A stretch of 64,000 bases of DNA from Phyllobates terribilis. Its lineage: Eukaryota. The translations under genes and the position numbers were made by a program. Location of the stretch: contig NW_027362762.1 in assembly GCF_046119375.1 (NCBI RefSeq), positions 441,378,001-441,442,000 on the forward strand, in the 5' to 3' direction. This document shows positions 12,654-64,000 of this stretch, in pieces (the first letter of the stretch is position 1; each line of letters begins with the position of its first letter). A model generated the notes under the pieces. The model ran no database searches. It had not been told where the DNA came from and saw only the letters and a list, made by a program, of their open reading frames with translations.

Positions 12654-12760
12654 TTAAAAGAAGGCAAAGAACAACATTTAAAAATAACCAGCAAGTAACC
12701 CAATAGGTGCAGAAATACTACAGAAAATCTGCAATATCAAAACGTGGCAACGTAGACTTA

Positions 12761-13018
<258 letters not shown>

Positions 13019-13226
13019 CTAAATGTCCGCAGCTCTCCACATTCACTTCTATGGGAGCTCCAGAAACTGCAGAGTAGATGGAACTTTTATATGTGACAGC
13101 CATAAATGACAGATGGGGATAGCCTTTAAAGTTTGGAAGGGGGAGATTCGACATCCAATTTGCTGTCAAAGAACTTTTCTCCGACACTCAACTGCAGGGG
13201 TAAAACATATGCAAGAATGAACTCAC

Positions 13227-13336
13227 TGGATTTGCAATGATGCAGATCATGGCTTCTGGACACGTTTTTGCACAAGCATCAGTGAGAGTGGCAACAATAG
13301 ATGCGTTGGTGTTGAAAAGATCATCACGGGTCATCC
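13227..13336 (-). CDS. mdh2: mdh2 exon 4 (110 nt)
   Basis: CAG|(G)[36 protein letters not shown]|GTGAGT. Confidence 0.98.
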
Positions 13337-13807
13337 CTGGACGAGAAAGCATTAAAGAGTTGCTAAACTGCACACAACTATATTATACGGACTAATGTAA
13401 CTGTAAAGACGAGATAAAAAAAAACCACAGGAAAAAGTTAAGAATTCATTCTGATGTGACCCAGCACACTGATAGAAAGGAATCTATTTTTAAAACACAA
13501 AAAAACATGAACATCTGAATGAGGCCTTATATATGTGGTCAATACAAAGGCCTGGCTTATGACTGATTCCTTCTCTGGATCTTATGAAGGACTAGGAACA
13601 TTTATTACTTGCGGCAGAAAAGCTATTCCTAAATAGCACAAGATTCTAGCACAGTTAAAGTAGTAAGGCCCTACTATATCAACATTTATAAAAGGGCTGG
13701 ATACTGTTCTGATAACCAATGAAATTGGAGTTACAAATAATCTAGAGATGGACAACGTATAATTGATAGAAAGATTATATTTGAAGGACACTTGAAGAAG
13801 AACTTAC

Positions 13808-13891
13808 CAGGCTTTCTAGGTACACCAGCAGGGATTACTACTACATCAGCACCTTTCAAGCTCTCTGGTAGCTGCTCTGCACCAATATATC
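13808..13891 (-). CDS. mdh2: mdh2 exon 3 (84 nt)
   Basis: TAG|(G)[27 protein letters not shown](G)|GTAAGT. Confidence 0.98.
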
Positions 13892-13949
13892 CTATAAGAA
13901 TGAGATAGTGTTTTAAGGTTACTTACATTTATATTAATACTAGTAGAAG

Positions 13950-14347
13950 ACACGGCCCGTACATAGTCTGGTCTTTTCTGTAGTAACATATCGATGCAAA
14001 ACCTGGACGATAAAGAAACAAGACAGAAGAACTATCGGCGCCTTCGAAATGTGGTGCTGGAGAAGGATGCTATCAATACCATGGACGGCAAGAAGAACAA
14101 GCAAGTCAATTTTGAAACAAATCAAGCATCACCAAGCTACGACTTGCCTACTTTGGACACATCATACGAAGAGAACAATCACTGGAGAAGGACATCATGG
14201 TCAGAAGAATAGAAGGGACAAGGAAAAGAGGAAGACGAGCAGCCTGATGGCTATATACAATCAAGATAATGGCAGAGAAGACCCTGGTGGACAGCATCTA
14301 GGCTTGCACAAGATCCATCTTCCTACAGAGCGTTCATCCATCAAGTC
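13950..14347 (+). mobile_element. RTE-clade LINE 3' fragment, left half (continues at 19113-19149)
   Basis: TYRCKTWTIKKQDRRTIGAFEMWCWRRMLSIPWTARRTSKSILKQIK... ending LAQDPSSYRAFIHQV. Confidence 0.85.
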
Positions 14348-14424
14348 ATAGAATCATAGAATGGTAGAGTTGGAAGGGACCTCCTGGGTCATCTGGTCCA
14401 ACCCCCTGCTCAAAGCAGGATTCA

Positions 14425-17209
14425 CTAGATCATCTCAGACAGATGTCTGTCCAGCCTCTGTTTGAAGACGTCCATTGAAGGGGAACTCACCACCTCTCGT
14501 GACAGCCTGTTCCACTCATTAATCACCCTAACTGTCAAAAAGTTTTTTCTAATATCTAATCTGTGTCTCCTCCCATTTGGTTTCATCCCATTGCTTCTAG
14601 TCTTTCCTTGTGCAAATGAGAATAAAGATGATCCTTCTACAATGTGACAGCCCTTGACATATTTGTAGACAGCTATTAAGTCTCCTCTCCGTCTTCTTAT
14701 TTGCAAGCTAAACATTCCCAAATCCTGCAACCGTTCCTCATAGGACATGGTTTGCAGACCAGTCACCATTCTGGTCGCTCTTCTCTGAACTTGTTCCAGT
14801 TTGTCTATGTCTTTTTTAAAATGTGGTGCCCAAAACTGTACACAGTATTCCAGATGAGGTCTGACCAAAGAGGAGTAAAGACCGATAATGACTTCACGTG
14901 ATCTAGACTGTATGCTTCTGTTAATACATCCCAGAATTGTATTTGCCTTTTTTGCTGCTGCATCACACTGTTGACTCATGTTCAGTCTATGATCTATTAG
15001 TATACCCAAGTCTTTTTCACATGTACTGTTGCTTAGCTCTATTCCTCCCATTCTGTATATGCTTTTTTCATTTTTATTGCCCAGATGTAGTACTTTGCAT
15101 TTTTCCCTGTTAAAAACCATTCTGTTGGTTGCTGCCCACTGCTCCAGTTTATTTAGGTCTTTTTGAATCCTCTCTCTCTTCTCTAGTATTAGCTATCCCT
15201 CCTAGCTTTGTGTCATCAGCAAATTTAATCAGTTTACCCTCAATTCCTTCATCTAAATCATTGATAAAGATGTTGAACAATACAGGTCCCAGGACGGAGC
15301 CCTGTGGTACCCCACTTGAGACATTCATCCAGCTGGATGTGAAGCCATTTACAACCACCCTTTGAGTCCGATCACTAAGCCAGTTATGAATCCACCTAAC
15401 AGTTGCCTGGTCCATTGCATACTTGGTCATTTTTTCAATAAGGATGATGTGAGATACTTTGTCAAATGCTTTGCTGAAGTCAAGATATACTATATCTACA
15501 GCATTTCCCTGATCCACCCAGTCAGTGATTCTGTCATAGAAGGAAATTAAGTTAGTCTGACATGACTTGTTAGTTACAAACCCATGCTGACTCTGGTTAA
15601 TCACTTCATTCTTATCCATGTACTTACATACATGTTGTTTAATAATTTGTTCAAAGATCTTTCCTGGTATAGAAGTCAGACTCACCGGCCTATAGTTCCC
15701 TGGGTCCACCTTCTTCCCCTTTTTGAAGATAGGAACAACATTTGCTCTTCTCCAGTCTTCTGGGACTTCTCCTGTTCTCCAAGAATTTTCAAAGATTATG
15801 GAGAGTGGTTCTAAAATTTCTTCTATGATCTCCTTCAGTACTCTGGGGTGTAATTCATCTGGACCTGGAGACTTGAACTCATTTATGTTAGCTAAATATT
15901 CCCTCACAATCTTTCTGTTTACTGATAACTTGGATTCCTCTATTCCTTTAAAAGGACAGTGAAGATCAGTTGATGTTACATTTTCTTTCTGAGAGAAAAC
16001 AGATGCAAAATAGGAATTAAAAAGTTCGGCCTTCTCAACATCCTCTCTTACCATTTCTCCATTTTCATCCTGTAAAAATCCTATAGCATCTTTGACTTTT
16101 CTTTTACTTTTGACATACCCCCAAAATCCTTTTTTATTGCTTTTGACATCTCTTGCAAGCCTTAATTCATTGTCAGCTTTAGCTAACCTGATACGTGCCC
16201 TACAGGATCTGCAGACTGCATTATAATCTTCTTTAGATATGCCTCCCTCTTTCCATTTAATAAACATTTCTTTCTTTTTTAGCATGTGTTTAAGTTCTGT
16301 GTTCATCCAAACTGGTTTCCTTAAATGCTTCCCATTCTTCCTACTTTTCGGGATTGTTAACGATTGTGCTTTGAGAATCTCATTTTTAAAAATTTCCCAT
16401 CCTTCCTGGACATTTTTGTCCTTAAGGACATCCAGCCATTGGATCCCTCCTATTCTCTTTCTGAGTCTCTTAAAATCTGCCTTTCTAAAATCTAACCTTG
16501 AAGTTTGAGTCTTCACATGTCTTCCTCCTCTAGTTATCCAAAATTCTATAATAGCATGATCGCTGCCTCCTAGGGTCCCAGCCACCTTTACCTCCTCAAC
16601 CATTTCCTCCCTGTTTATAAGAATTAGATCCAAAGTAGCAGATCCCCTTGTTTTCTCCCCTACCTTTTGGAAGATAAAGTTGTCAGCAAGAGAGGATAAG
16701 AATTTGCTTGACCTGTTAGTTTTACTTGAGAGAGATTCCCAACAAATGTCTGGATAGTTGAAATCTCCCATGACCACTACGTCATATTTTTTGGAGAACT
16801 TGGTCATTTGATACATAAAGAGTTCATCCATATCTTCAGCTTGCCCAGGTGGCCTGTAGTAAATGCCTACAATGGTGTCCTTTCCGTTGTTCTCTCCTTG
16901 TATTCTTACCCAAACAGTTTCCACAGAACTCCCAGTCTCTGAAGCTTCAATCTCTGTGCAGATATACGCTTTTCTAACATACAATGCGACACCTCCTCCT
17001 CGTTTATCAAGTCTGTTTCTTGCAAATAAGTTGTATCCTTTTAGCCTTTTATTCCAATCATGTGTATCGTCCCACCAAGTTTCAGTGATTCCAATGACAT
17101 CATATTCCTTTTCCTGCATTAGTAGTTCCAATTCTCCTTGTTTGTTGCCCATGCTTTGTGCATTTGTATAAAAACATTTTAGTTTGTGATTGGTTTCTCT
17201 TCCTCCCAT
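14425..17209 (-). pseudogene. CR1 ORF2 (endonuclease-reverse transcriptase), one frameshift at about 15170
   Basis: ORFs 15149-17209 (686 aa) and 14425-15120 (231 aa) join if one AG is restored in an (AG)n run (EERE[R][11 protein letters not shown]). Confidence 0.9.
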
Positions 17210-17331
17210 ATTTTTATTATTTAGATTTTTTTGTCTTTGTTCTTCTTTTCCACTTCCAGTAGCAGAGATCTCAATAGTATTTGTCAGCTGTATGGCTTTT
17301 TCTGGCCTTTTGCTTCCCTTCCCACATTGTT

Positions 17332-18294
17332 CTAGTTTAAAGCTCTTCTGATGAATGTAGCAAGGCGACTTCCAAATACATGTTTTCCAGTCTTCGTAAG
17401 GTGCACCCCATCTCTAGCAAGTAGACCATCGTATAGGTAATTCATTCCGTGATCCAGAAATCCAAATCCTTGTTGACGGCACCATCGACGTAGCCAGTTG
17501 TTCACCTGTAGAATCTTATTCCACCTCATTGTTCCATGGCCATCCACTGGGAGGATGGATGAGAAGACCACCTGCGCTCCCAATTCTTTCACTTTCTTGC
17601 CTAAGTCTTCAAAGTCACTGCAGATGGTTTCCAGGTCCTTTCTTGCGGTGTCATTTGTCCCCACATGTATTAGCAGGAATGGGTAGTGATCTGTAGGTCT
17701 GAAGAGTCTTGATATCCTGTCAGACACATCTTTAATTTTTGCTCCTGGAAGACAGCACATTTCTCTTGAGGTTATGTCTGGTCTGCAGATAGCGGCCTCT
17801 GTTCCTCTTAACAGGGAATCCCCCATGACCACCACTCTCCGTTTTTACTTCACAACATTCTTCTTTCTCCATCCAGGAGGATTCTGAGGGCTTACAAGGT
17901 TATTCATTGCTGGCAAAGTCTTATTTTGCTGTATTTCTTCATGGTTCTCCTGTGCGAGAGCCTGGTACTGGTTCCTGAGCAGTATGGGTGCTGACTGCCT
18001 CTCGATCCTCCTGCTTCTGTGGGTCACATGCTTCCATTCCTCTGTTTCGTCAGGTGCAGTTCGAATTTCTTCTCTTTCTGAATCATGAAGAGATAATTCT
18101 GCTCTGTCTAAGAACTCTTCACCTTCCTTAATGATTTTCAAGGTAGTTAACCTCTCTTCTAGATTTCGCAACTTTTCCTCCAACAGGGACACAAGCTTGC
18201 ATTTCTGGCATGTGAAGTCTGGCTTTTCCACTGGCAAGTCTGTGAACATGTAGCAGGATATGCAGCTCACCAAATGGCTCCTGGACTCTTCCAT
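17332..18294 (-). pseudogene. CR1 ORF1 (zinc-finger-like/leucine zipper/esterase), one in-frame TAA at 17845-17847
   Basis: MEESRSHLVSCISCYMF...FTCQKCKLVSLLEEKLRNLEERL...KNVVK*KRRVVVMGDSLLRG; both ORF-track pieces are in the same frame. Confidence 0.85.
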
Positions 18295-18353
18295 GTTCTT
18301 ATTGTTAATGTTCTGAAAACAGTGAAAAAAGCTTAAAAAAAAAAGCTTCAAAA

Positions 18354-19112
18354 TGGTTTACCGATGTCCTCTTTTCAGCTGCAACAGCCAAAATCCAGTG
18401 TTCTTTGAGCTCGCGGAGACTCTTCACTTACCCCAAAATGCAGTGGGAATATGCAAATTATCTCCTCAGGACTCCTCCCCTGGTTTACCGATGTCCTCTT
18501 TTCAGCTGCAACAGCCAAAATCCAGTGTTCTTTGAGCTCGCGGAGACTCTTCACTTACCCCAAAATGCAGTGGGAATATGCAAATTATCTCCTCAGGACT
18601 CCTCCCCTGGTTTACCGATGTCCTCTTTTCAGCTCCAACAGCCAAAATCCAGTGTTCTTTGAGCTCGCGGAGACTCTTCACTTACCCCAAAATGCAGTGG
18701 GAATATGCAAATTATCTCCTCAGGACTCCTCCCCTGGTTTACCGATGTCCTCTTTTCAGCTGCAACAGCCAAAATCCAGTGTTCTTTGAGCTCGCGGAGA
18801 CTCTTCACTTACCCCAAAATGCAGTGGGAATATGCAAATTATCTCCTCAGGACTCCTCCCCTGGTTTACCGATGTCCTCTTTTCAGCTGCAACAGCCAAA
18901 ATCCAGTGTTCTTTGAGCTCGCGGAGACTCTTCACTTACCCCAAAATGCAGTGGGAATATGCAAATTATCTCCTCAGGACTCCTCCCCTGGTTTACCGAT
19001 GTCCTCTTTTCAGCTCCAACAGCCAAAATCCAGTGTTCTTTGAGCTCGCGGAGACTCTTCACTTACCTCAAAATGCAGTGGAAATATGCAAATTATCTCC
19101 GCAGGACTCCTC
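18354..19112 (-). repeat. Tandem array of six near-identical 127-bp monomers forming the CR1 5' end
   Basis: ATGCAAAT recurs at 18451, 18578, 18705, 18832, 18959 and 19086; 759 bp is about 5.98 units. Confidence 0.97.
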
Positions 19113-19149
19113 GCCATGGTTCGAGATCAAGTTGAAGGCAGTTAAATAA
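19113..19149 (+). mobile_element. RTE-clade LINE 3' fragment, right half
   Basis: GCC ATG GTT CGA GAT CAA GTT GAA GGC AGT TAA ATAA = AMVRDQVEGS*; continues the frame broken at 14347. Confidence 0.8.
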
Positions 19150-19579
19150 GGAAACAGCACTTGAATACTTAAAGCTCTCACAATAAATAATCTTGGATCA
19201 AAAAGATGTATAACGGCCAGTTAGCCCAAAACCAGGAGCCAGTACTGAGAAATTATACTGGGAACAATTCAACAAGGCTTTACCAGTAACAGAAGCATAT
19301 TGGTTACCTTGGTCTGGGGATCTGACAAAGTCCACACACGGCAGTAATAAAATGAAAGCTGAAACGTAACTAAAGGAGTACTCCTAACATATCTACAGCA
19401 TATCAGTGTTTTGGAAATAAATCAACCCTGCTTTTACCCTAAACTTGTATAATCCCTTGAATTGTCTGATCAATGGTCAAATCGCCAACAATCCAAGCTG
19501 CCAGAAGGGTGTCTGGTCACACCATTCCATCTCCTATGGAAGTTAATTAAGTGAACCCATTACCTCTCCCTCTGGAGAT

Positions 19580-19739
19580 CAGTGTTCCCCAACTCCAGTC
19601 CTCAAGTCCACCAACAGATCTAGTTTTCAAGATTTCACTGGTGGTGTACATGTGAAAATTCCATTACCTGTACAATACTAAGGAAATCCTGAAAACACAA
19701 CCTGTTGGTGGCCTTGAGGACTGGAGTTGGGGAACACTG
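19580..19739. mobile_element. hAT (Charlie-like) MITE
   Basis: Perfect TIRs CAGTGTTCCCCAACTCCAGTCCTCAAG; related to 2441-2623; TSD not recognisable. Confidence 0.75.
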
Positions 19740-20336
19740 ATATAGAATATGAGACTATGCACCCACACTCAGAATATTGTTGAGAGTCTATTAGTAGTGC
19801 CCACACATATCAAACATTGCGCCATAAATAAGCAGGCGGAGAAGCCATTGAAATGAACATGCGCATACATTGGTTTATTAAAGGGGTTGTCTCATTCTTT
19901 GTCCAGGAGCGCACCGCTCCCCTCCTGACTTCCTGCCTGCGGGCCCTCCTGAATATTAACAGTTCGAACCAGAGCCATTGTTACACCCCTACCTCCCATA
20001 CAAGCAGAGATAGTTTTACCTCTGCAGCATCGGAGGAGCAGAGGGGACGCGAGGCTGGCCAGATCCAACTTCAGAGCAGCGCTTGCAAGCTGTAAAGATA
20101 AAGTCTTGCAAGTACATGCTCCTTCTCTAAGGAAACGGCCACCTCTGGAAGAATGGAGAGATGGTCAGCAAGTTATGCAGCGAACTGTAAACTCTAGAGA
20201 ATGGGGAGGATTTTTAGTATTTAGCCTGTTTTTACAAACACTTTGCAGTTTTACCCATTTAACAAGAAGAGAACCTCTTCAACATAGAAGTAAAACTTTT
20301 CAGTAACACGTACAATACAAGTGATGGTCACTTTAC

Positions 20337-20505
20337 CTGTCACCTTTGCTCTTGTTTCAATGTGGCTCAAGTCTGCAGCTACACCGGGTGTGTGGGCAAT
20401 ATCATATAGAGCCAGGTTGCTAATCAAGGGACTGTTCTTCAGCAAAAGGGAAAGAGGCTGCCCGATTCCTCCAGATGCACCAAGTACGGCCACTCTGGCA
20501 TTGTT
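20337..20505 (-). CDS. mdh2: mdh2 exon 2 (169 nt)
   Basis: CAG|[56 protein letters not shown](G)|GTAAAG; NAD-binding GASGGIG. Confidence 0.98.
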
Positions 20506-21858
20506 CTGAAAAAGCAACAGTTATATACATTACACTTGAACTTACAGAGCTATCAGGCAACTGTGTTATTAGAACTTCTGCTTACGCCCCATGTACACTG
20601 CCATTGACAAAGCTCTAATAGAGGCTCCATTGTAGTGCATGGGGGCCTTTACAGCACTTTTATACAGTTTTTTTTAAAGTTTGAATTCATAGATATCAGA
20701 AAAAAAAAATAAGTGTGGCAAGCTCCGTCAGAAGGTGCATTGCATTACTTCTAGCAGGTCAGCTAAATACCTGCAGTCACTGCATTCGACTGCAGAACGC
20801 GGACATTGGGCATTATGCAGACAGTCTGGATTCCCCCTCTATGGCTTGATCTTGCAGGCGGTCACATGCTGACTATATCCTCAGGCGCTTCTCTCAATAC
20901 CAAATATGGTACTCAGCGTGGGAACTAAACCCTACAGTGTGTGTGTGGGGGGGGGGGTTTTACTGTAGGGTTTAGTTCCCACACTGAGTACGTATTTGGA
21001 TCAAGTTCGTATGTTATCCCCCATCAACAACATAGGAGATAACTGAGCGATCCCTGGAACCAGGCTCTGCAGAGCCACATCTTGAATGTAGTGGAAGTCT
21101 GCATGCTCAACCTCTGCTCTATTCATTGTCTAAAGGACTGACGGAGGAGGCCGAGCACTGCACTTAGTACGTTAGCCGCCATCAATCACTGTACTACCTT
21201 GACAATAAAGATTAGGCCCCATCTTCACAAGACCACTTCTCTTCCTCCTCGTCCCCACTCCTACTACCCAACTGTTGAACCCTAGAGAATAAGGCCAGAT
21301 GGAGCGCCCCTACCCAAAAGGTCTGTGCTAGATCAATGAAAGATTGAAAAGGAGAGTGCAGCTTCCATTTTTTTTTTTTGCCAATGTGGAATATCTGTGG
21401 CAAGACTTTAATGGAACAGACAAAAAAATGCATTTCTGAATTATATCCCCTGCTTTGGTTAAAATGGAAAGGGTGGAAGTTTTTTTTTTTTCTTTTTGTT
21501 AACCTATAAAGAGGCATCTGCCATATAGTTTTACTACACATACAAAGTTCCCTCTTAACACCGATGGGTTTCCTAAACTAGCTCCACATGACCTTTACTG
21601 CAGCACTAGAAGACATTGCTATTGCCTTTACACACACAACACCCAGCAATCCGGTGGACTGACCCAGCTGACACAATGTGACAGGATAGGTCAGGGGTCG
21701 GACGTGCAGGGCGCATCTCTATATTTGATCATTACAGAACCGTAAGTGGGGCCTATGCAGGAAAACCTTCAGCGCAATATGGTGACATATACAAGAACCA
21801 GCCACCATGTTCACAGCTCACAAGTGTTGCCATAGAATGCATATAGTCTAAGGCTTAA

Positions 21859-29026: not shown

Positions 29027-29110
29027 CTTTGTCCTTACAACTGGACAACCCCATTACTTTGTCATTACTACTGGGCAACTCAATTACTTTGTCCTTACTA
29101 CTGGACAACC
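29027..29110. repeat. 30-bp minisatellite, left arm (about 3 diverged units)
   Basis: Unit ACTACTGGACAACCCCATTACTTTGTCCTT. Confidence 0.9.
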
Positions 29111-34050: not shown

Positions 34051-34527
34051 AGGCTGTCTCTAGGACCCAGCGGCTACCTTCCTCTGGCTAATTAAACACC
34101 CTGGCCTGGGTGTATAAATACCTGCTGTGTATCAGAGGGAGGTGCCGGCAATATTCATTTCTCCCTGTGAAGGCTTTAGCAAGAGCAGTACATCTTTCTC
34201 TTTGGTGTTGAGGACATGTGCGCATTTGTCTGGAGTCATCTAAAGCTAAGCAATTTTCCCGTTTGTCCTCCCTTGTTGTCCTTAGTGTTCAGTGGGGATC
34301 GACTAGTGCTCATCTCCTCCCTTCCTTAGCCTTAACCAAACGCCAGGGAAAGACAGGGCAATGAACATGTGCGGCGATCGGTGAAGAGCCAATATAGGGA
34401 CGATAGAATATCACCCTGTCTCCCCTATCAGCCAGGAGGTCTCCACTCCCCACTTTCCCTAGAGTCTTGGCTTCATTTCCCTCTTCCCTTTGTGTTGCAC
34501 TAAGTCTTTCCCACACCTTGCGTGACA

Positions 34528-35068
34528 CAACCCCATTACTTTGTCCTTACTACTGGACAACCCCATTACCTTGTCCTTACTACTGGACAACCCCATTACC
34601 TTGTCCTTACTACTGGACAACCCCATTACCTTGTCCTTACCACTGGACAACCCCATTACCTTGTCCTTACTACTGGACAACCCCATTACCTTGTCCTTAC
34701 TACTGGACAACCCCATTACCTTGTCCTTACCACTGGACAACCCCATTACTTTGTCCTAACTCCTGGACAACCCCATTACTTTGTCCTAACTCCTGGACAA
34801 CCCCATTACTTTGTCCTTATCACTGGACAACCCCATTACTTTGTCCTTATCACTGGACAACCCCATTACTTTGTCCTTATCACTGGACAACCCCATTACT
34901 TTGTCCTTATCACTGGACAACCCCATTACTTTGTCCTTACTACTGGACAACCCCATTACTTTGTCCTTACTACTGGACAACCCCTTACTTTGTCCTTACT
35001 ACTGGACAACCTCTTACTTTGTGCTTACTAGTGGACAACCCCTTACTTTGTGCTTACTACTGGACAAC
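34528..35068. repeat. 30-bp minisatellite, right arm (about 18 units)
   Basis: Same unit as 29027-29110, resuming at the TSD CAACC. Confidence 0.97.
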
Positions 35069-35925: not shown

Positions 35926-38900
35926 ACATAGTTACATAGTTTCTAAGGCCGAAAAAAGACAAGCATCCATCCAGTTCAGCCTATTTCTTGTGCACTGCAG
36001 CTATTCCGCAGCGTTGATCCAGGGGAAGGCAAAAAAAAAACCATGCGGTATAGGCCAATTTACATCATTGAGGAAAAATTCACTTCCCGACTCCAATCTG
36101 GCAGTCAGATTAAATCCCTGGATTAATTAACTATCACTAAGCATAAGATGTAATTGTATTGTTCTCAAGAAAGGCGTCCAGGCGTCATTAAGTGAGTTGA
36201 ACATCACCACTTCCTCTCCCAGAGAATTGCAGAGTCTCATGGCTCTGACCGTAAAGAATCCCCTTCTATGCTGCCTCCAGACGCACAGTGTGCCCCCTCG
36301 TCTTTGTCACCATCCTTGGTATAAACAGGTCATGGGAGAGATCTCTGTACTGCCCCCTGATGTATTTATACATGTTTATGAGGTCTCCCCTAAGCCTTCT
36401 CTTTTCCAACGTAAATAGGCCTAATTTTGACAACCTCTCTGGGTATTCTAGTCCCTCCATTCCCTTTATTACCTTAGTCGCCCTCCTTTGTACCCTCTCT
36501 AGCTCCAATTTGTCTTTCCTGAGCACCGGAGCCCAGAACTGTGCACAATATTCTAAGTGCGGCCTTACCAGCGCTTTATACAGAGGAAGAACAATGTTCT
36601 CATCATATGCCCCTATTCCTCTTCTGATGCATGCCATGACTCTATTTGCCTTCGCAGCTGCTGCCTGACACTGGGCACTCCAATTTAATTTGCTATTAAC
36701 CAAGACGCCCAGGTCCTTCTCCATATCAGATTTCCCCAACGGTTTCCCATTTAATATGTATGGGTGACTGCTGTTTTTCTTTCCCATGTGCATGACCTTA
36801 CATTTATTGGCATTGAACCCCATTTGCCATTTTTTGGCCCAACTCCCCAATTTATCTAAATCCTCCTGTAGCTGTGCCCTATCCTCATCTGTATTAACTA
36901 CTTTACAAAGTTTAGTATCATCTGCAAATATTGCTATTTTACTATGCAACCCTTCCACTAGATCATTAATAAATATATTAAATAATATAGGGCCCAAGAC
37001 AGACCCTTGAGGCACCCCGCTAGTAACCCTGACACCCCCTGAGCTTACTCCATTGATAACCACCCTCTGTTTTCTATCACTCAGCCAGCTATTTACCCAC
37101 TTGCACACATTATCCCCCAGACCAAGCATTCTCATTTTATATACCAACCTTTTGTGTGGCACGGTATCAAACGCTTTGGAGAAGTTAAGGTATACAACAT
37201 CCACTGACTCTCCCCGGTCCAGCTGTGAGCTCACCTCCTCGTAGAAGGCGATCAGGTTTGTTTGGCAGGAGCGATCCCTCATGAATCCATGTTGATATGG
37301 AGTTAGACAGTTATTATCATTAAGATATTCTACAATAGCATCTCTAAGAAATCCTTCAAACAATTTACCCACAACAGACGTTAAGCTGACTGGTCTATAG
37401 TTCCCAGGGTCACTTTTAGACCCCTTTTTGAATATTGGTACCACATTTGCTTGGCGCCAGTCTAGTGGGACAGTCCCTGTCCATAAAGAGTACTTGAATA
37501 TAAGATACAGCGGCCTGTCTATCACATTACTTAATTCTTTTAGTACCCGGGGGTGTATGCCATCTGGGCCTGGTGACTTGTCTATTTTGATATTATTTAG
37601 GCGTTTCTGAACTTCCTCCTGGGTTAGGTGGGTGATATTTAGCGGAGGGTTTACTTTATCACTCTGCATTTCCTCCGATAAATTGTTTTCTTTTGTGAAA
37701 ACAGTGGAGAAGAAGCTATTGAGTAGGTTTGCTTTACCCTCATCGCCCTCTATGATTTTACCCAGGTTATTTTTCAATGGGCCAGCGCCATCAGTTTTAA
37801 TCCTTTTACTGTTTATATAGTTAAAGAACAGTTTGGGATTTGTTTTACTTTCCTTGGCAATTAGTCTCTCTGTCTCCTCTTTTGCTATTCTTATTTGTTT
37901 CTTACAGATTTTGTTTTTTTCCCTATAAGATATTAGCGCTTCCTCGCTGCCTTCTTGTTTAAGTTTACCAAAAGCCCTTTTTTTGTTTTTCATTGCCCTC
38001 TTGACTTCCTTATTTAGCCACATTGGCTTCCTCCTATTCCTAGCCCTTTTATTCCCATAAGGTATGTACCTTCTACAGTGACTATGTAGGACTGTTTTGA
38101 AAATTTCCCATTTTCTATCCGTGCTCCTATTACTGAAGATACTATCCCAGTCTATAAGGTGAAGGGCATCTCTTAGCTGATCAAACTTTGCCCTCCTGAA
38201 GTTCAGTGTTTTTGTGACTCCCTTGCTGGGCACCCTACTGAAGCACATGTGGAATCGTATAATGTTGTGGTCACTATTTCCCAGGTGCCCCCCGACCTGC
38301 ACCTCAGTTATTCTGTCTGACCTGTTAGTTAATATTAAGTCTAAAAGGGCCGTCCCTCTAGTTGGTTCCTGCACAAGTTGTGACAAATAATTGTCTTTGA
38401 TAATTGACAGAAACCTGTTTCCATTCTGAGATCTACAGCTTTCGGTTTCCCAGTCTATATCGGGGTAGTTGAAGTCCCCCATAATAATCACCTCGTTATT
38501 TTTTGCTACTTCGTCTATTTGTCTCATTAATAGACTTTCCGTGGCTTCTGCTATATTTGGTGGTTTATAACAGACTCCTATGATAATTTTATTATTGTTT
38601 TTTGCCCCATGTATCTCCACCCATAAGGACTCGACCTCCTCATTTCCCTCCCATACATCCTCCCGTATTGTAGGCTTTAGACACGTCTTTACATATAGAC
38701 AGACTCCACCCCCTTTCCGACTTCTTCGATCCCTTCTAAACAGACTGTAACCCTGTAAGTTAACTGCCCAGTCATAGCTTTCATCTAACCATGTCTCGGT
38801 TATTCCCACTATGTCATAGTTACCTGTAGATATTTCTGCTTCCAGTTCATCCATCTTGTTTGTCAGGCTCCTGGCATTTGCTAGCATGCAGTTTACACGA

Positions 38901-39044
38901 TTTTGTTTTGTTCCAATCTTCTCCCTGTGGATTGTATTAGAAATTTTCTTACCTCCCTTCCAAGTATCTTGTCTTGGACCTTCTTTGTCGCACTTCATAT
39001 CTTTCATTAGTATGTTCTCTGGTTTCACGTTCGTGTCCGTTTAA
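35926..39044 (-). mobile_element. CR1 LINE, 5'-truncated at the ORF1/ORF2 junction
   Basis: (TAACTATG)2 tail at 35926-35940; 920-aa ORF 36266-39028 with APE (GITETW, GDFN, SDHN) and RT (FADD); deletion/frameshift near the C-terminus. Confidence 0.95.
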
Positions 39045-62330: not shown

Positions 62331-62594
62331 TTATTCAGATGTGACATCATTAAGGTATCAAGAAATGGATCCGAAAATCTGCATTTAATGTTGCAGCATT
62401 TTTATTTTAATACAGTTGCATTTTATTTTCAGAGCACAGATAAAAGCCATTACTGTGGCGAACCCTAATGCAATACTTGTATCAACCTGCACTAGGTCCA
62501 GTATAAAGAGATTCACAACTGAACAGGCCTTTCCTGAGAGAAACCCCCCGGCAGGAGGGAGCAGCGCTGCTGTTAGCGGCCAGAGCGCCACATT

Positions 62595-64000
62595 CTGCCC
62601 TGTATATTCTGCCCTGTACGGTCTGCCCTGTACATTCTGCCCTGTACGGTCTGCCCTGTACATTCTGCCCTGTACGGTCTGCCCTGTACATTCTGCCCTG
62701 TACATTCTGCCCTGTACGGTCTGCCCTGTACATTCTGCCCTGTACGGTCTGCCCTGTACATTCTGCCCTGTACGGTCTACGCTGTACGGTCTGCCCTGTA
62801 CATTCTGCCCTGTATGGTCTGCCCTGTACATTCTGCCCTGTACGGTCTGCCCTGTACATTCTGCCCTGTACGGTCTGCCCTGTACGGTCTGCCCTGTACG
62901 GTCTGCCCTGTACATTCTGCCCTGTACGGTCTGCCCTGTACATTCTGCCCTGTACGGTCTGCCCTGTACATTCTGCCCTTTACGGTCTGCCCTGTACATT
63001 CTGCCCTGTACATTCTGCCCTGTACGGTCTGCCCTGTACATTCTGCCCTGTACGGTCTGCCCTGTACATTCTGCCCTGTACATTCTGCCCTGTACAGTCT
63101 GCCCTGTACGGTCTGCCCTGTACATTCTGCCCTGTACGGTCTGCCCTGTACATTCTGCCCTGTACGGTCTGCCCTGTACGGTCTGCCCTGTACATTCTGC
63201 CCTGTACGGTCTGCCCTGTACATTCTGCCCTGTACATTCTGCCCTGTACGGTCTGCCCTGTACATTCTGCCCTGTACATTCTGCCCTGTACGGTCTGCCC
63301 TGTACGGTCTGCCCTGTACATTCTGCCCTGTACATTCTGCCCTGTACGGTCTGCCCTGTACGGTCTGCCCTGTACATTCTGCCCTGTACATTCTGCCCTG
63401 TACGGTCTGCCCTGTACATTGTGCCCTGTACATTCTGCCCTGTACGGTCTGCCCTGTACATTCTGCCCTGTACGGTCTGCCCTGTACGGTCTGCCCTGTA
63501 CATTCTGCCCTGTACGGTCTGCCCTGTACGGTCTGCCCTGTACATTCTGCCCTGTACATTCTGCCCTGTACGGTCTGCCCTGTACATTCTGCCCTGTACG
63601 GTCTGCCCTGTACATTCTGCCCTTTACGGTCTGCCCTGTACATTCTGCCCTGTACGGTCTGCCCTGTACATTCTGCCCTGTACGGTCTGCCCTGTACATT
63701 CTGCCCTGTACATTCTGCCCTGTACGGTCTGCCCTGTACGGTCTGCCCTGTACATTCTGCCCTGTACATTCTGCCCTGTACGGTCTGCCCTGTACATTCT
63801 GCCCTGTACGGTCTGCCCTGTACATTCTGCCCTGTACGGTCTGCCCTGTACGGTCTACGCTGTACGGTCTGCCCTGTACATTCTGCCCTGTACGGTCTGC
63901 CCTGTACATTCTGCCCTGTACATTCTGCCCTGTACGGTCTGCCCTGTACATTCTGCCCTGTACGGTCTGCCCTGTACATTCTGCCCTGTACGGTCTGCCC
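62595..64000. repeat. 14-bp two-variant minisatellite, about 100 units, open at the window end
   Basis: Units CTGCCCTGTACATT (A) and CTGCCCTGTACGGT (B); the 14-bp register holds at 62777, 62973, 63617 and 63855. Confidence 0.99.

What the first reader, a model, noticed from the sequence alone, without database searches (positions are those of the whole stretch)
18354..19112. CR1 LINE with a monomer-array 5' end: six 127-bp units, each carrying a perfect octamer ATGCAAAT
Seen: the array directly abuts ORF1. It lies inside the interval bounded by the two halves of the split RTE, so it came in with the CR1, at least as a precursor unit. Octamers are at 18451, 18578, 18705, 18832, 18959 and 19086. 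Known: tandem 5'UTR monomers act as additive promoters in rodent L1, and ATGCAAAT is the POU site; frog Pou5f3 proteins drive zygotic genome activation. Inference: this is a renewable monomer promoter/enhancer tuned to oocyte or early-embryo POU factors. I do not recall this architecture being described for CR1.
Basis: partly seen in the sequence, partly recalled or inferred. Interest (0 to 1): 0.8.

Follow-up and report, generated by a model that had tools for sequence, protein, structure and literature searches.

The report
Frog CR1 LINE with repeat-built leader
A young but dead CR1 jumping gene in a poison-frog genome starts with six near-identical 127-base repeats, a layout known from mouse L1 that I did not find reported for CR1; whether the repeats act as its promoter is untested.

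Summary
Window 18354-19115 is six head-to-tail 127-bp units. Four are identical, one differs at 1 base, and the outermost differs at 5. Each carries one perfect octamer at the stated coordinates.

Corrections:
- The CR1 lies on the minus strand, so the octamer reads ATTTGCAT on the sense strand.
- A 59-nt T-rich tether separates the array from the ORF1 ATG, so the array does not abut ORF1.
- The six octamers are one event copied six times.

A 7-bp target-site duplication bounds a 4779-bp insertion (14347-19125) in MDH2 intron 2. The array starts 10 nt from the element's 5' end, so at least one unit came in with the CR1 RNA.

The coding body is 78% identical in DNA to a related CR1, but the 5'UTR has no counterpart there. 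ORF2 is 97-99% identical to Phyllobates terribilis proteins.

The scan has noted this before on other DNA of the same genome: many CR1 copies with 127-bp arrays of about 3 to 75 units, one already followed up. I could not fetch those copies.

Best reading: a family-level, variable-number monomer 5'UTR that holds the internal promoter. This is argued by elimination, not shown. Tuning to oocyte or embryo POU factors is untested, and the units are neither CpG-rich nor paired with a Sox site.

This is a new variant of a known kind, of moderate interest.

The parts
19126..19132 (-). Upstream copy of the 7-bp target-site duplication (ACTTGAT on the element strand)
   Evidence: Exact 7-mer shared with 14340-14346, directly next to both element ends. 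The flanks join in frame when the insertion is removed.
19116..19125 (-). 10-nt 5' terminus of the element (CTCGAACCAT). It ends in the AACCA that also ends every unit, and with the next bases it forms ATGGCG and the only ATG of the 5'UTR.
   Evidence: Direct reading. Either a remnant of a seventh unit or the ancestral upstream flank; not resolved.
18354..19115 (-). Six tandem 127-bp units. On the sense strand each holds AGATAA (18-23), octamer ATTTGCAT (23-30), GGTAAGT (49-55) and TTGCAG (97-102). Units have no sense ATG, 48% GC and CpG o/e 0.44.
   Evidence: TRF; unit-by-unit comparison; motif positions and composition; no other copy in the window by nhmmer or blastn.
18989..19115 (-). Unit 6, the 5'-most unit. 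It has 4 private substitutions plus one shared with unit 3.
   Evidence: All 4 private changes falling in one unit has P about 0.005 under random decay.
18295..18353 (-). 59-nt T-rich non-repeated tether, ending in a pyrimidine tract plus CAG 18 nt before the ORF1 ATG
   Evidence: Direct reading. TRF finds only a 14-bp x2 A/T-rich repeat here.
17332..18294 (-). ORF1: Cys-rich N-terminus and coiled-coil part, then a GDSL/SGNH esterase domain. It is interrupted by one in-frame TAA at 17845-17847.
   Evidence: ORF list; Pfam Lipase_GDSL_2 3e-08; 48% and 76% identity to the ORF1 of L001; stop codon.
14425..17209 (-). ORF2: apurinic-type endonuclease plus reverse transcriptase, broken by one frameshift near 15121-15151
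   Evidence: Pfam Exo_endo_phos 6.7e-17 and RVT_1 3.7e-28; frame change; 97-99% identity to Phyllobates terribilis proteins.
14347..14424 (-). 78-nt 3'UTR with a GGUUGGA...UCCAAC hairpin and a terminal (ATTCTATG)x2 at 14347-14362; no poly(A)
   Evidence: Direct reading. The fold is -23.9 kcal/mol but not better than shuffles, z -1.2.
14340..14346 (-). Downstream copy of the 7-bp target-site duplication

Best explanation
This is a young, inactive copy of a CR1 LINE family of a dendrobatid frog, probably Phyllobates terribilis. It has one nonsense codon in ORF1 and one frameshift in ORF2.

Its 831-nt 5'UTR is almost wholly a 127-bp unit repeated six times, joined to ORF1 by a 59-nt tether. The array belongs to the retrotransposed unit and is a family trait with a variable unit number.

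Because a LINE must carry its own RNA polymerase II promoter downstream of its start site, and nothing but units, 10 nt and a T-rich tether precedes ORF1, the promoter most likely lies in the units. The octamer/GATA block is the best candidate site.

Unit number changes by slippage or unequal exchange, seeded by the AACCA that flanks the unit, and possibly by start-site choice.

Shown: the anatomy, the insertion boundaries, and that the 5'UTR is specific to this lineage. Inferred: the promoter role. Unproven: dependence on the octamer and any germline or embryo POU factor.
For: - The array is real and far beyond chance.
- The element is a CR1 by ORF2 EN+RT, the ORF1 esterase, the (ATTCTATG)n tail and its reptile/bird CR1 relatives.
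- A 7-bp duplication bounds 14347-19125, with the array 10 nt from the 5' end.
- Units form 762 of 831 nt of the 5'UTR.
- The sense strand of the unit has no ATG (shuffle P 0.06), as suits a scanned leader.
- The body aligns at 78% nucleotide identity with a related CR1 (L001) from codon ~14 of ORF1 to the 3' end, but the 5'UTR has no counterpart. This is the pattern of 5'UTR replacement known in L1 (PMC5381506).
- No free copy of the unit lies elsewhere in the 64 kb.
- Unchecked scan notes report the same 127-bp units 5' of CR1 at many other loci, with about 3, 4, 10, 18, 20 and 75 units.
- Mouse L1 precedent: monomers act as additive promoters, two suffice, and the mean is 4-5.6 per element (PMC2894050).
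Against: - There are no expression, start-site or binding data.
- I could not fetch a single other copy to verify the family-level claim.
- The units are not GC- or CpG-rich (48%, o/e 0.44), unlike mouse L1 monomers.
- The octamer is one copied event.
- Inner units are nearly identical while the edge unit holds all 4 private changes. This shows recent homogenisation or expansion that needs no selection.
- A reported 9.6-kb array is more satellite-like than promoter-like.
- Some LINE promoters extend into ORF1, so the argument by elimination is not airtight.
Confidence: 0.6

Rival explanations
1. The array is a neutral variable-number minisatellite inside the 5'UTR. The family has a fixed start site at the 10-nt terminus and a promoter confined to the first unit or extending into ORF1. 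The extra units are passengers that expand and contract by slippage or unequal exchange, without additive promoter effect.
For: - There are exactly 6.0 units in phase, flanked on both sides by AACCA. This is the signature of slippage between short direct repeats (model cited in PMC6947457).
- The edge unit is diverged and the inner units are homogenised.
- Units 3 and 6 share a variant three units apart, suggesting a 381-bp block duplication.
- An array of 9.6 kb is reported elsewhere (unchecked).
- L1 5'UTRs of horse, elephant, opossum and hyrax also carry 2-3 tandem duplications with no shown role (PMC5381506).
Against: - A young, successful family that keeps multi-unit arrays at many loci suggests at least tolerance, and perhaps benefit.
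- In mouse L1 the same architecture is additive (PMC2894050).
- The absence of any sense ATG in the unit fits a retained, translated-through leader.
Confidence: 0.25
2. The repeated leader is built to be spliced. Each unit offers a consensus donor (G|GTAAGT), and one strong acceptor lies 18 nt before the ORF1 ATG. One RNA form would keep the array as retrotransposition template, and another would lose it to give a short-leader mRNA. This can coexist with either reading above.
For: - GGTAAGT is at unit position 49 in all six units.
- A pyrimidine tract plus CAG ends 18 nt before the ATG.
- An earlier scan note reads the same stretch this way (s1-225798).
Against: - This rests on motif matches only, with no RNA evidence.
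- The donors are one event copied six times.
- I computed no splice-site scores.
- Splicing of L1 leaders is known mainly as a defect-producing side reaction (from memory, not checked here).
Confidence: 0.15
3. The array is private to this locus: a single-unit 5'UTR was amplified to six units after insertion into the MDH2 intron.
For: Near-identity of units 1-5, and an integer unit number in phase. I verified no other copy myself.
Against: - Many scan notes of 127-bp arrays 5' of CR1 at other loci of the same genome, with differing unit numbers.
- The four private changes of unit 6 imply that the array already had distinct unit types.
Confidence: 0.05

Closest known systems
Mouse and rat L1 (L1Md A, Tf, Gf) monomeric 5'UTR
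   Same: - A tandem array of like units at the extreme 5' end.
- A non-repeated tether before ORF1.
- Unit number of the same order: six here, against a mean of 4-5.6 and up to 12-17 in mouse (PMC2894050).
- A 5'UTR unrelated to that of sister families (PMC5381506).
   Different: - A different LINE clade: CR1, with an esterase ORF1 and an (ATTCTATG)n tail instead of poly(A).
- Units of 127 bp, not ~200 bp (mouse) or ~650 bp (rat).
- Not GC- or CpG-rich.
- A 59-nt tether, not ~250 nt.
- The candidate site is an octamer/GATA block, not YY1 within a CpG island.
- Promoter activity is untested.
Amniote CR1 (chicken CR1-B, turtle and lizard CR1)
   Same: - ORF2 with EN+RT and ORF1 with an esterase domain.
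- A 3'UTR hairpin plus an (ATTCTATG)n tail.
- ORF2 identity of 55-78% to turtle, Podarcis, Anolis and tegu proteins.
   Different: The chicken CR1-B 5'UTR is a tested promoter (PMC2734521). I found no report of a tandem-unit 5'UTR in the papers searched. The related Logan element L001 has an unrelated leader.
Tandem duplications in the L1 5'UTRs of horse, elephant, opossum and hyrax
   Same: Motifs of ~70-100 bp duplicated two or three times inside a LINE 5'UTR, with no shown function (PMC5381506).
   Different: Here there are six nearly identical units, and reportedly up to tens elsewhere. They make up almost the whole leader, in a CR1.
Octamer-driven promoters and enhancers (histone H2B, immunoglobulin, snRNA enhancers; Pou5f3 targets at frog and fish genome activation, PMC6753111, PMC8831532)
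   Same: A perfect ATTTGCAT/ATGCAAAT, repeated every 127 bp.
   Different: No adjoining Sox half-site, no TATA at the usual distance, no evidence of binding, and the site is also bound by ubiquitous Oct1 (established knowledge).

Membership tests
CR1-clade LINE | ORF2 with an apurinic-type endonuclease followed by a reverse transcriptase | tested here: met
   Pfam Exo_endo_phos 6.7e-17, Exo_endo_phos_2 7.2e-12, RVT_1 3.7e-28.
CR1-clade LINE | ORF1 with an esterase (SGNH/GDSL) domain. I recall this as typical of CR1-like elements from Kapitonov and Jurka 2003; not re-read here. | tested here: met
   Lipase_GDSL_2 3e-08, above the curated cut-off. 76% identity to the ORF1 of a related CR1 contig.
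CR1-clade LINE | 3' end without poly(A), ending in short 8-nt repeats (ATTCTRTG)n after a hairpin | tested here: met
   (ATTCTATG)x2 at 14347-14362, directly before the target-site duplication. The hairpin folds but is not better than shuffles.
CR1-clade LINE | Nearest protein relatives are CR1 elements | tested here: met
   The best hits are EN+RT proteins of lizards, turtles, birds and alligator at 47-78% identity, and Phyllobates terribilis at 97-99%. Source names are generic, so the clade label rests on the other rows.
L1Md-type monomeric LINE promoter | Two or more like units in tandem at the 5' end, joined to ORF1 by a non-repeated tether | tested here: met
   Six units of 127 bp plus a 59-nt tether.
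L1Md-type monomeric LINE promoter | Belongs to the L1 clade | tested here: not met
   The element is a CR1 (rows above). The likeness is therefore one of design, not of descent.
L1Md-type monomeric LINE promoter | GC-rich, CpG-island monomers (>65% GC and ~16 CpG in Tf monomers, PMC2894050) | tested here: not met
   48% GC, 3 CpG per unit, o/e 0.44.
L1Md-type monomeric LINE promoter | Unit number varies between copies of the family | not testable with these tools
   No other copy could be fetched. Unchecked scan notes give about 3 to 75 units.
L1Md-type monomeric LINE promoter | Units initiate transcription, and activity rises with their number | not testable with these tools
   Needs CAGE or 5' RACE and reporter assays.
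POU/octamer-dependent regulatory element | Perfect octamer ATGCAAAT/ATTTGCAT | tested here: met
   One per unit, six in all. About 0.004 expected per unit.
POU/octamer-dependent regulatory element | Octamer conserved more than its surroundings across diverged units or copies | tested here: inconclusive
   The units are 96-100% alike. With 5 changes in unit 6, missing the 8-nt site by chance has P about 0.72.
POU/octamer-dependent regulatory element | Adjoining Sox half-site, as in Pou5f1/Pou5f3-Sox composite elements | tested here: not met
   The bases next to the octamer are GGGAAT on one side and TATCTCC on the other (+ strand), with no CATTGT-type motif. A GATA-type AGATAA overlaps the site instead.

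The most novel reading that the evidence does not exclude
The 127-bp unit is a modular promoter that depends on its octamer and responds to maternal or embryonic class V POU factors. Its copy number would set how strongly this CR1 family is transcribed in the germline or early embryo. That would be an independent, CR1-clade invention of the rodent L1 monomer strategy, possibly combined with splicing-out of the array to make a short-leader mRNA.
Probability: 0.2. Interest if true: 0.7.

Novelty: new variant of a known kind. Interest (0 to 1): 0.5.

Why it matters
Monomer-built LINE promoters are known mainly from rodent L1. They are the standard example of how a retrotransposon renews and tunes its own promoter. 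The same design in a CR1, in a 12.6-Gb frog genome estimated at 88% repeats (PMC12208295), would be a case of convergent evolution. It would also give a second, independent system for asking how unit number is kept up despite 5' loss at each round of copying, and which host factors drive LINE expression in amphibian germlines. It matters for annotation too: such arrays can be mistaken for satellites, and a sense-oriented copy puts six splice-donor-like sites and a strong acceptor into an MDH2 intron.

Tried and rejected
Attempts to obtain other copies of the family all failed:
- The two Phyllobates terribilis proteins at 97-99% identity sit on records too large to be served as DNA.
- A protein search with the 112-aa antisense ORF that runs through the array found nothing.
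- A search with the ORF1 N-terminus found nothing in the allowed length range.
- The exhaustive representative search gave no hit above 66% identity. Of the two hits I looked up, one was not on record and the other had no DNA served.
- Exact scans of metagenome contigs (two patterns) and viral contigs with parts of the unit found nothing.

Other checks that led nowhere:
- Rfam: no RNA family in 18200-19300.
- RNA folding of one unit is unremarkable, z -0.5.
- The ESM Atlas did not identify the flanking repeat as an RTE.
- A second CR1-like LINE in the window (36266-39028) has no tandem array at its 5' side and no upstream ORF1, so it is no useful control.

Ideas considered and dropped:
- A free satellite captured next to a CR1 by chance. 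The target-site duplication encloses it.
- An snRNA-type promoter (octamer plus PSE). Only half of a remembered PSE consensus matches, and the spacing does not fit the observed 5' end.

Full report
**What is there**

Tandem Repeats Finder reports a single strong array at 18354-19121: period 127, 6.0 copies, 98% matches, score 1485. Cut in register from 18354, the units compare as follows:
- Units 1, 2, 4 and 5 are identical.
- Unit 3 differs at one base.
- Unit 6 (18989-19115) differs at five bases, one of them shared with unit 3.

The octamer ATGCAAAT occurs at the six stated positions.

As statistics, the six octamers are one event copied six times. A unit of this composition is expected to hold about 0.004 octamers. 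That is rare for one named motif, but not remarkable given how many motifs a reader would have found meaningful.

**Orientation and identity of the element**

The LINE lies on the minus strand.
- ORF1 starts at 18294. It has a Cys-rich N-terminus and a GDSL/SGNH esterase domain.
- ORF2 has an apurinic-type endonuclease and a reverse transcriptase (Pfam).
- The 78-nt 3'UTR ends in (ATTCTATG)x2 with no poly(A). It contains the GGUUGGA...UCCAAC hairpin, which folds but is not better than shuffles.

These are the features of a CR1 in the strict sense.

ORF1 carries one in-frame TAA at 17845-17847, and ORF2 has one frameshift near 15121-15151. This copy is therefore dead, though little decayed.

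**Boundaries**

The 7-mer ATCAAGT (+ strand) lies at 14340-14346, directly after the CR1 tail, and again at 19126-19132. With the insertion removed, the flanking sequence reads on in one frame to a stop.

The element is therefore 14347-19125, 4779 bp. It sits in sense orientation in the intron between two MDH2 exons.

Its 831-nt 5'UTR consists of:
- a 10-nt terminus (CTCGAACCAT);
- six units, 762 nt in all;
- a 59-nt T-rich tether.

Because the array lies inside the duplication, at least one unit was part of the RNA that was copied in. I did not test that the flanking repeat is an RTE.

**Host and relatives**

- ORF2 is 97% and 99% identical to two proteins annotated in Phyllobates terribilis, on records of 985 and 657 Mb. 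The window is very probably from that species or a close relative.
- The next relatives are a Logan contig (74%), tegu lizard (76-78%), Podarcis and Anolis (62-63%) and turtles (about 55%). Another frog, Leptobrachium, reaches only 42%.
- The Logan contig L001 aligns with this element at 78% nucleotide identity from about codon 14 of ORF1 to the 3' end. Its 92 nt of leader and this element's whole 5'UTR share nothing.

The leader is thus a lineage-specific acquisition on a conserved body, as is usual for L1 (PMC5381506).

**Is it a family trait?**

I could not fetch any other copy. The attempts are listed under Tried and rejected. Within the window, the unit occurs nowhere else.

The only evidence is the scan's own notes on other windows of this genome, which I did not verify. 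They describe 127-bp, octamer-bearing arrays 5' of CR1 at many loci. The lengths are 342, 507, 1228, 1285, 1351, 2370 (18 units), 2550, 2641 (about 20 units) and 9601 letters. One of these was followed up by another agent, whose conclusion was: layout like mouse L1, promoter role untested.

So the scan has found this before on other DNA. On that basis I rate a locus-private expansion as unlikely.

**What the unit looks like**

On the sense strand the unit (window:18481-18607:-) holds:
- AGATAA at positions 18-23, overlapping ATTTGCAT at 23-30;
- a consensus donor-like GGTAAGT at 49;
- a CpG-containing CCGCGAGCTC;
- TTGCAG at 97.

Further properties:
- It has no sense ATG (shuffle P 0.06).
- It is 48% GC with a CpG ratio of 0.44, so it is not a CpG island.
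- Its RNA fold is unremarkable.
- No Rfam family matches.
- No Sox-type half-site adjoins the octamer (direct reading).

**How the array behaves**

All four private substitutions sit in the 5'-most unit. The chance is about 0.005 for any one unit and 0.0008 for that unit. The other five units are almost identical. Edge units that lag behind a homogenised core are typical of arrays that turn over by slippage or unequal exchange.

Units 3 and 6 share a variant exactly three units apart, which hints at a 381-bp block duplication.

AACCA ends every unit and also ends the 10-nt terminus just before unit 6. This is the short flanking direct repeat expected if the first duplication arose by slippage (model cited in PMC6947457).

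This suggests a sharp test between two models. If all full-length copies begin with the same 10 nt, the start site is fixed and the array is a variable stretch inside the leader. If their 5' ends fall at many positions within units, each unit starts transcription, as in mouse L1.

**Mechanism**

A LINE must carry its polymerase II promoter inside the transcript. Here nothing but 10 nt, the units and a T-rich tether precedes ORF1, and the family is young and abundant. The promoter therefore most likely lies in the units, or at least in the first one.

This is an argument by elimination, not a result.

- The octamer/GATA block is the best candidate site.
- The terminus also forms ATGGCG, the core that L1 elements of mammals and lizards carry near their start (PMC5381506). 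This is a post hoc match.
- An additive effect of unit number has a precedent in mouse L1 (PMC2894050) but is untested here.
- Tuning to maternal Pou5f3 is plausible in principle, since Pou5f3 acts with Sox3 on chromatin before frog genome activation (PMC6753111). Nothing in the sequence supports it over ubiquitous Oct1.

**Comparison and novelty**

The design matches rodent L1 in having units, a tether, a variable number and a lineage-specific leader. It differs in LINE clade, unit size, base composition and candidate factor.

Of the six literature searches, the four aimed at CR1 or non-LTR leaders found no tandem-unit CR1 5'UTR. The chicken CR1-B promoter paper does not mention one. Repbase notes and subscription journals were not covered.

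I class it as a new variant of a known kind, of moderate interest.

Noticed in passing
window 14347-19125 versus one search hits: This frog CR1's ORF2 is 74-78% identical to a tegu lizard CR1 and to an unidentified Logan sample (SRR32269917). It reaches only 42% with the one other frog in the hit list (Leptobrachium) and about 55% with turtles. The tegu and Logan proteins are also 78% alike. This is either an old, slowly evolving CR1 lineage kept in few hosts, or transfer between hosts.
   Followed up: partly
window 18405-19149, + strand: The strand antisense to the CR1 is open almost throughout the array: one stop per 381 nt across all three frames, giving ORFs of 105-112 aa. Shuffles of the unit reach this in 1.25% of cases. 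The ORF product has no relatives. This is probably a by-product of the purine-rich sense strand.
   Followed up: partly
window 19112-19125, minus strand: The element's first bases read CTCGAACCATGGCG, containing ATGGCG at +9 to +14. This is the core of the YY1-type box found near the start of mammalian and lizard L1 (PMC5381506). It is also the only ATG of the leader, in a good Kozak context, and opens a uORF of about 35 codons. The match is post hoc.
   Followed up: no
window 12758-20517, minus strand: The host gene is mitochondrial-type malate dehydrogenase (Ldh_1_N 1.2e-14; further exon-like frames). The CR1 lies in sense orientation in the ~6.4-kb intron after the NAD-binding exon. It brings six GGTAAGT sites and a strong acceptor into that intron.
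   Followed up: no
window 19578-19741: A 76-nt inverted repeat pair, 84% complementary and 12 nt apart, just upstream of the CR1 insertion site. It looks like a small foldback or MITE-type element.
   Followed up: no
window 36266-39028, minus strand: An uninterrupted 920-aa EN+RT ORF of a second, distantly related CR1-like LINE (64% nucleotide identity over 684 nt). It has no ORF1 and no tandem array upstream.
   Followed up: partly
window 29027-29110 and 34527-35068; 62594-64000: The same 30-bp unit is repeated 2.8 and 18 times at two sites about 5.5 kb apart, around long + strand ORFs. These may be the two ends of an LTR element that another scan note calls a chromovirus. A 28/42-bp satellite runs off the window end.
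   Followed up: no
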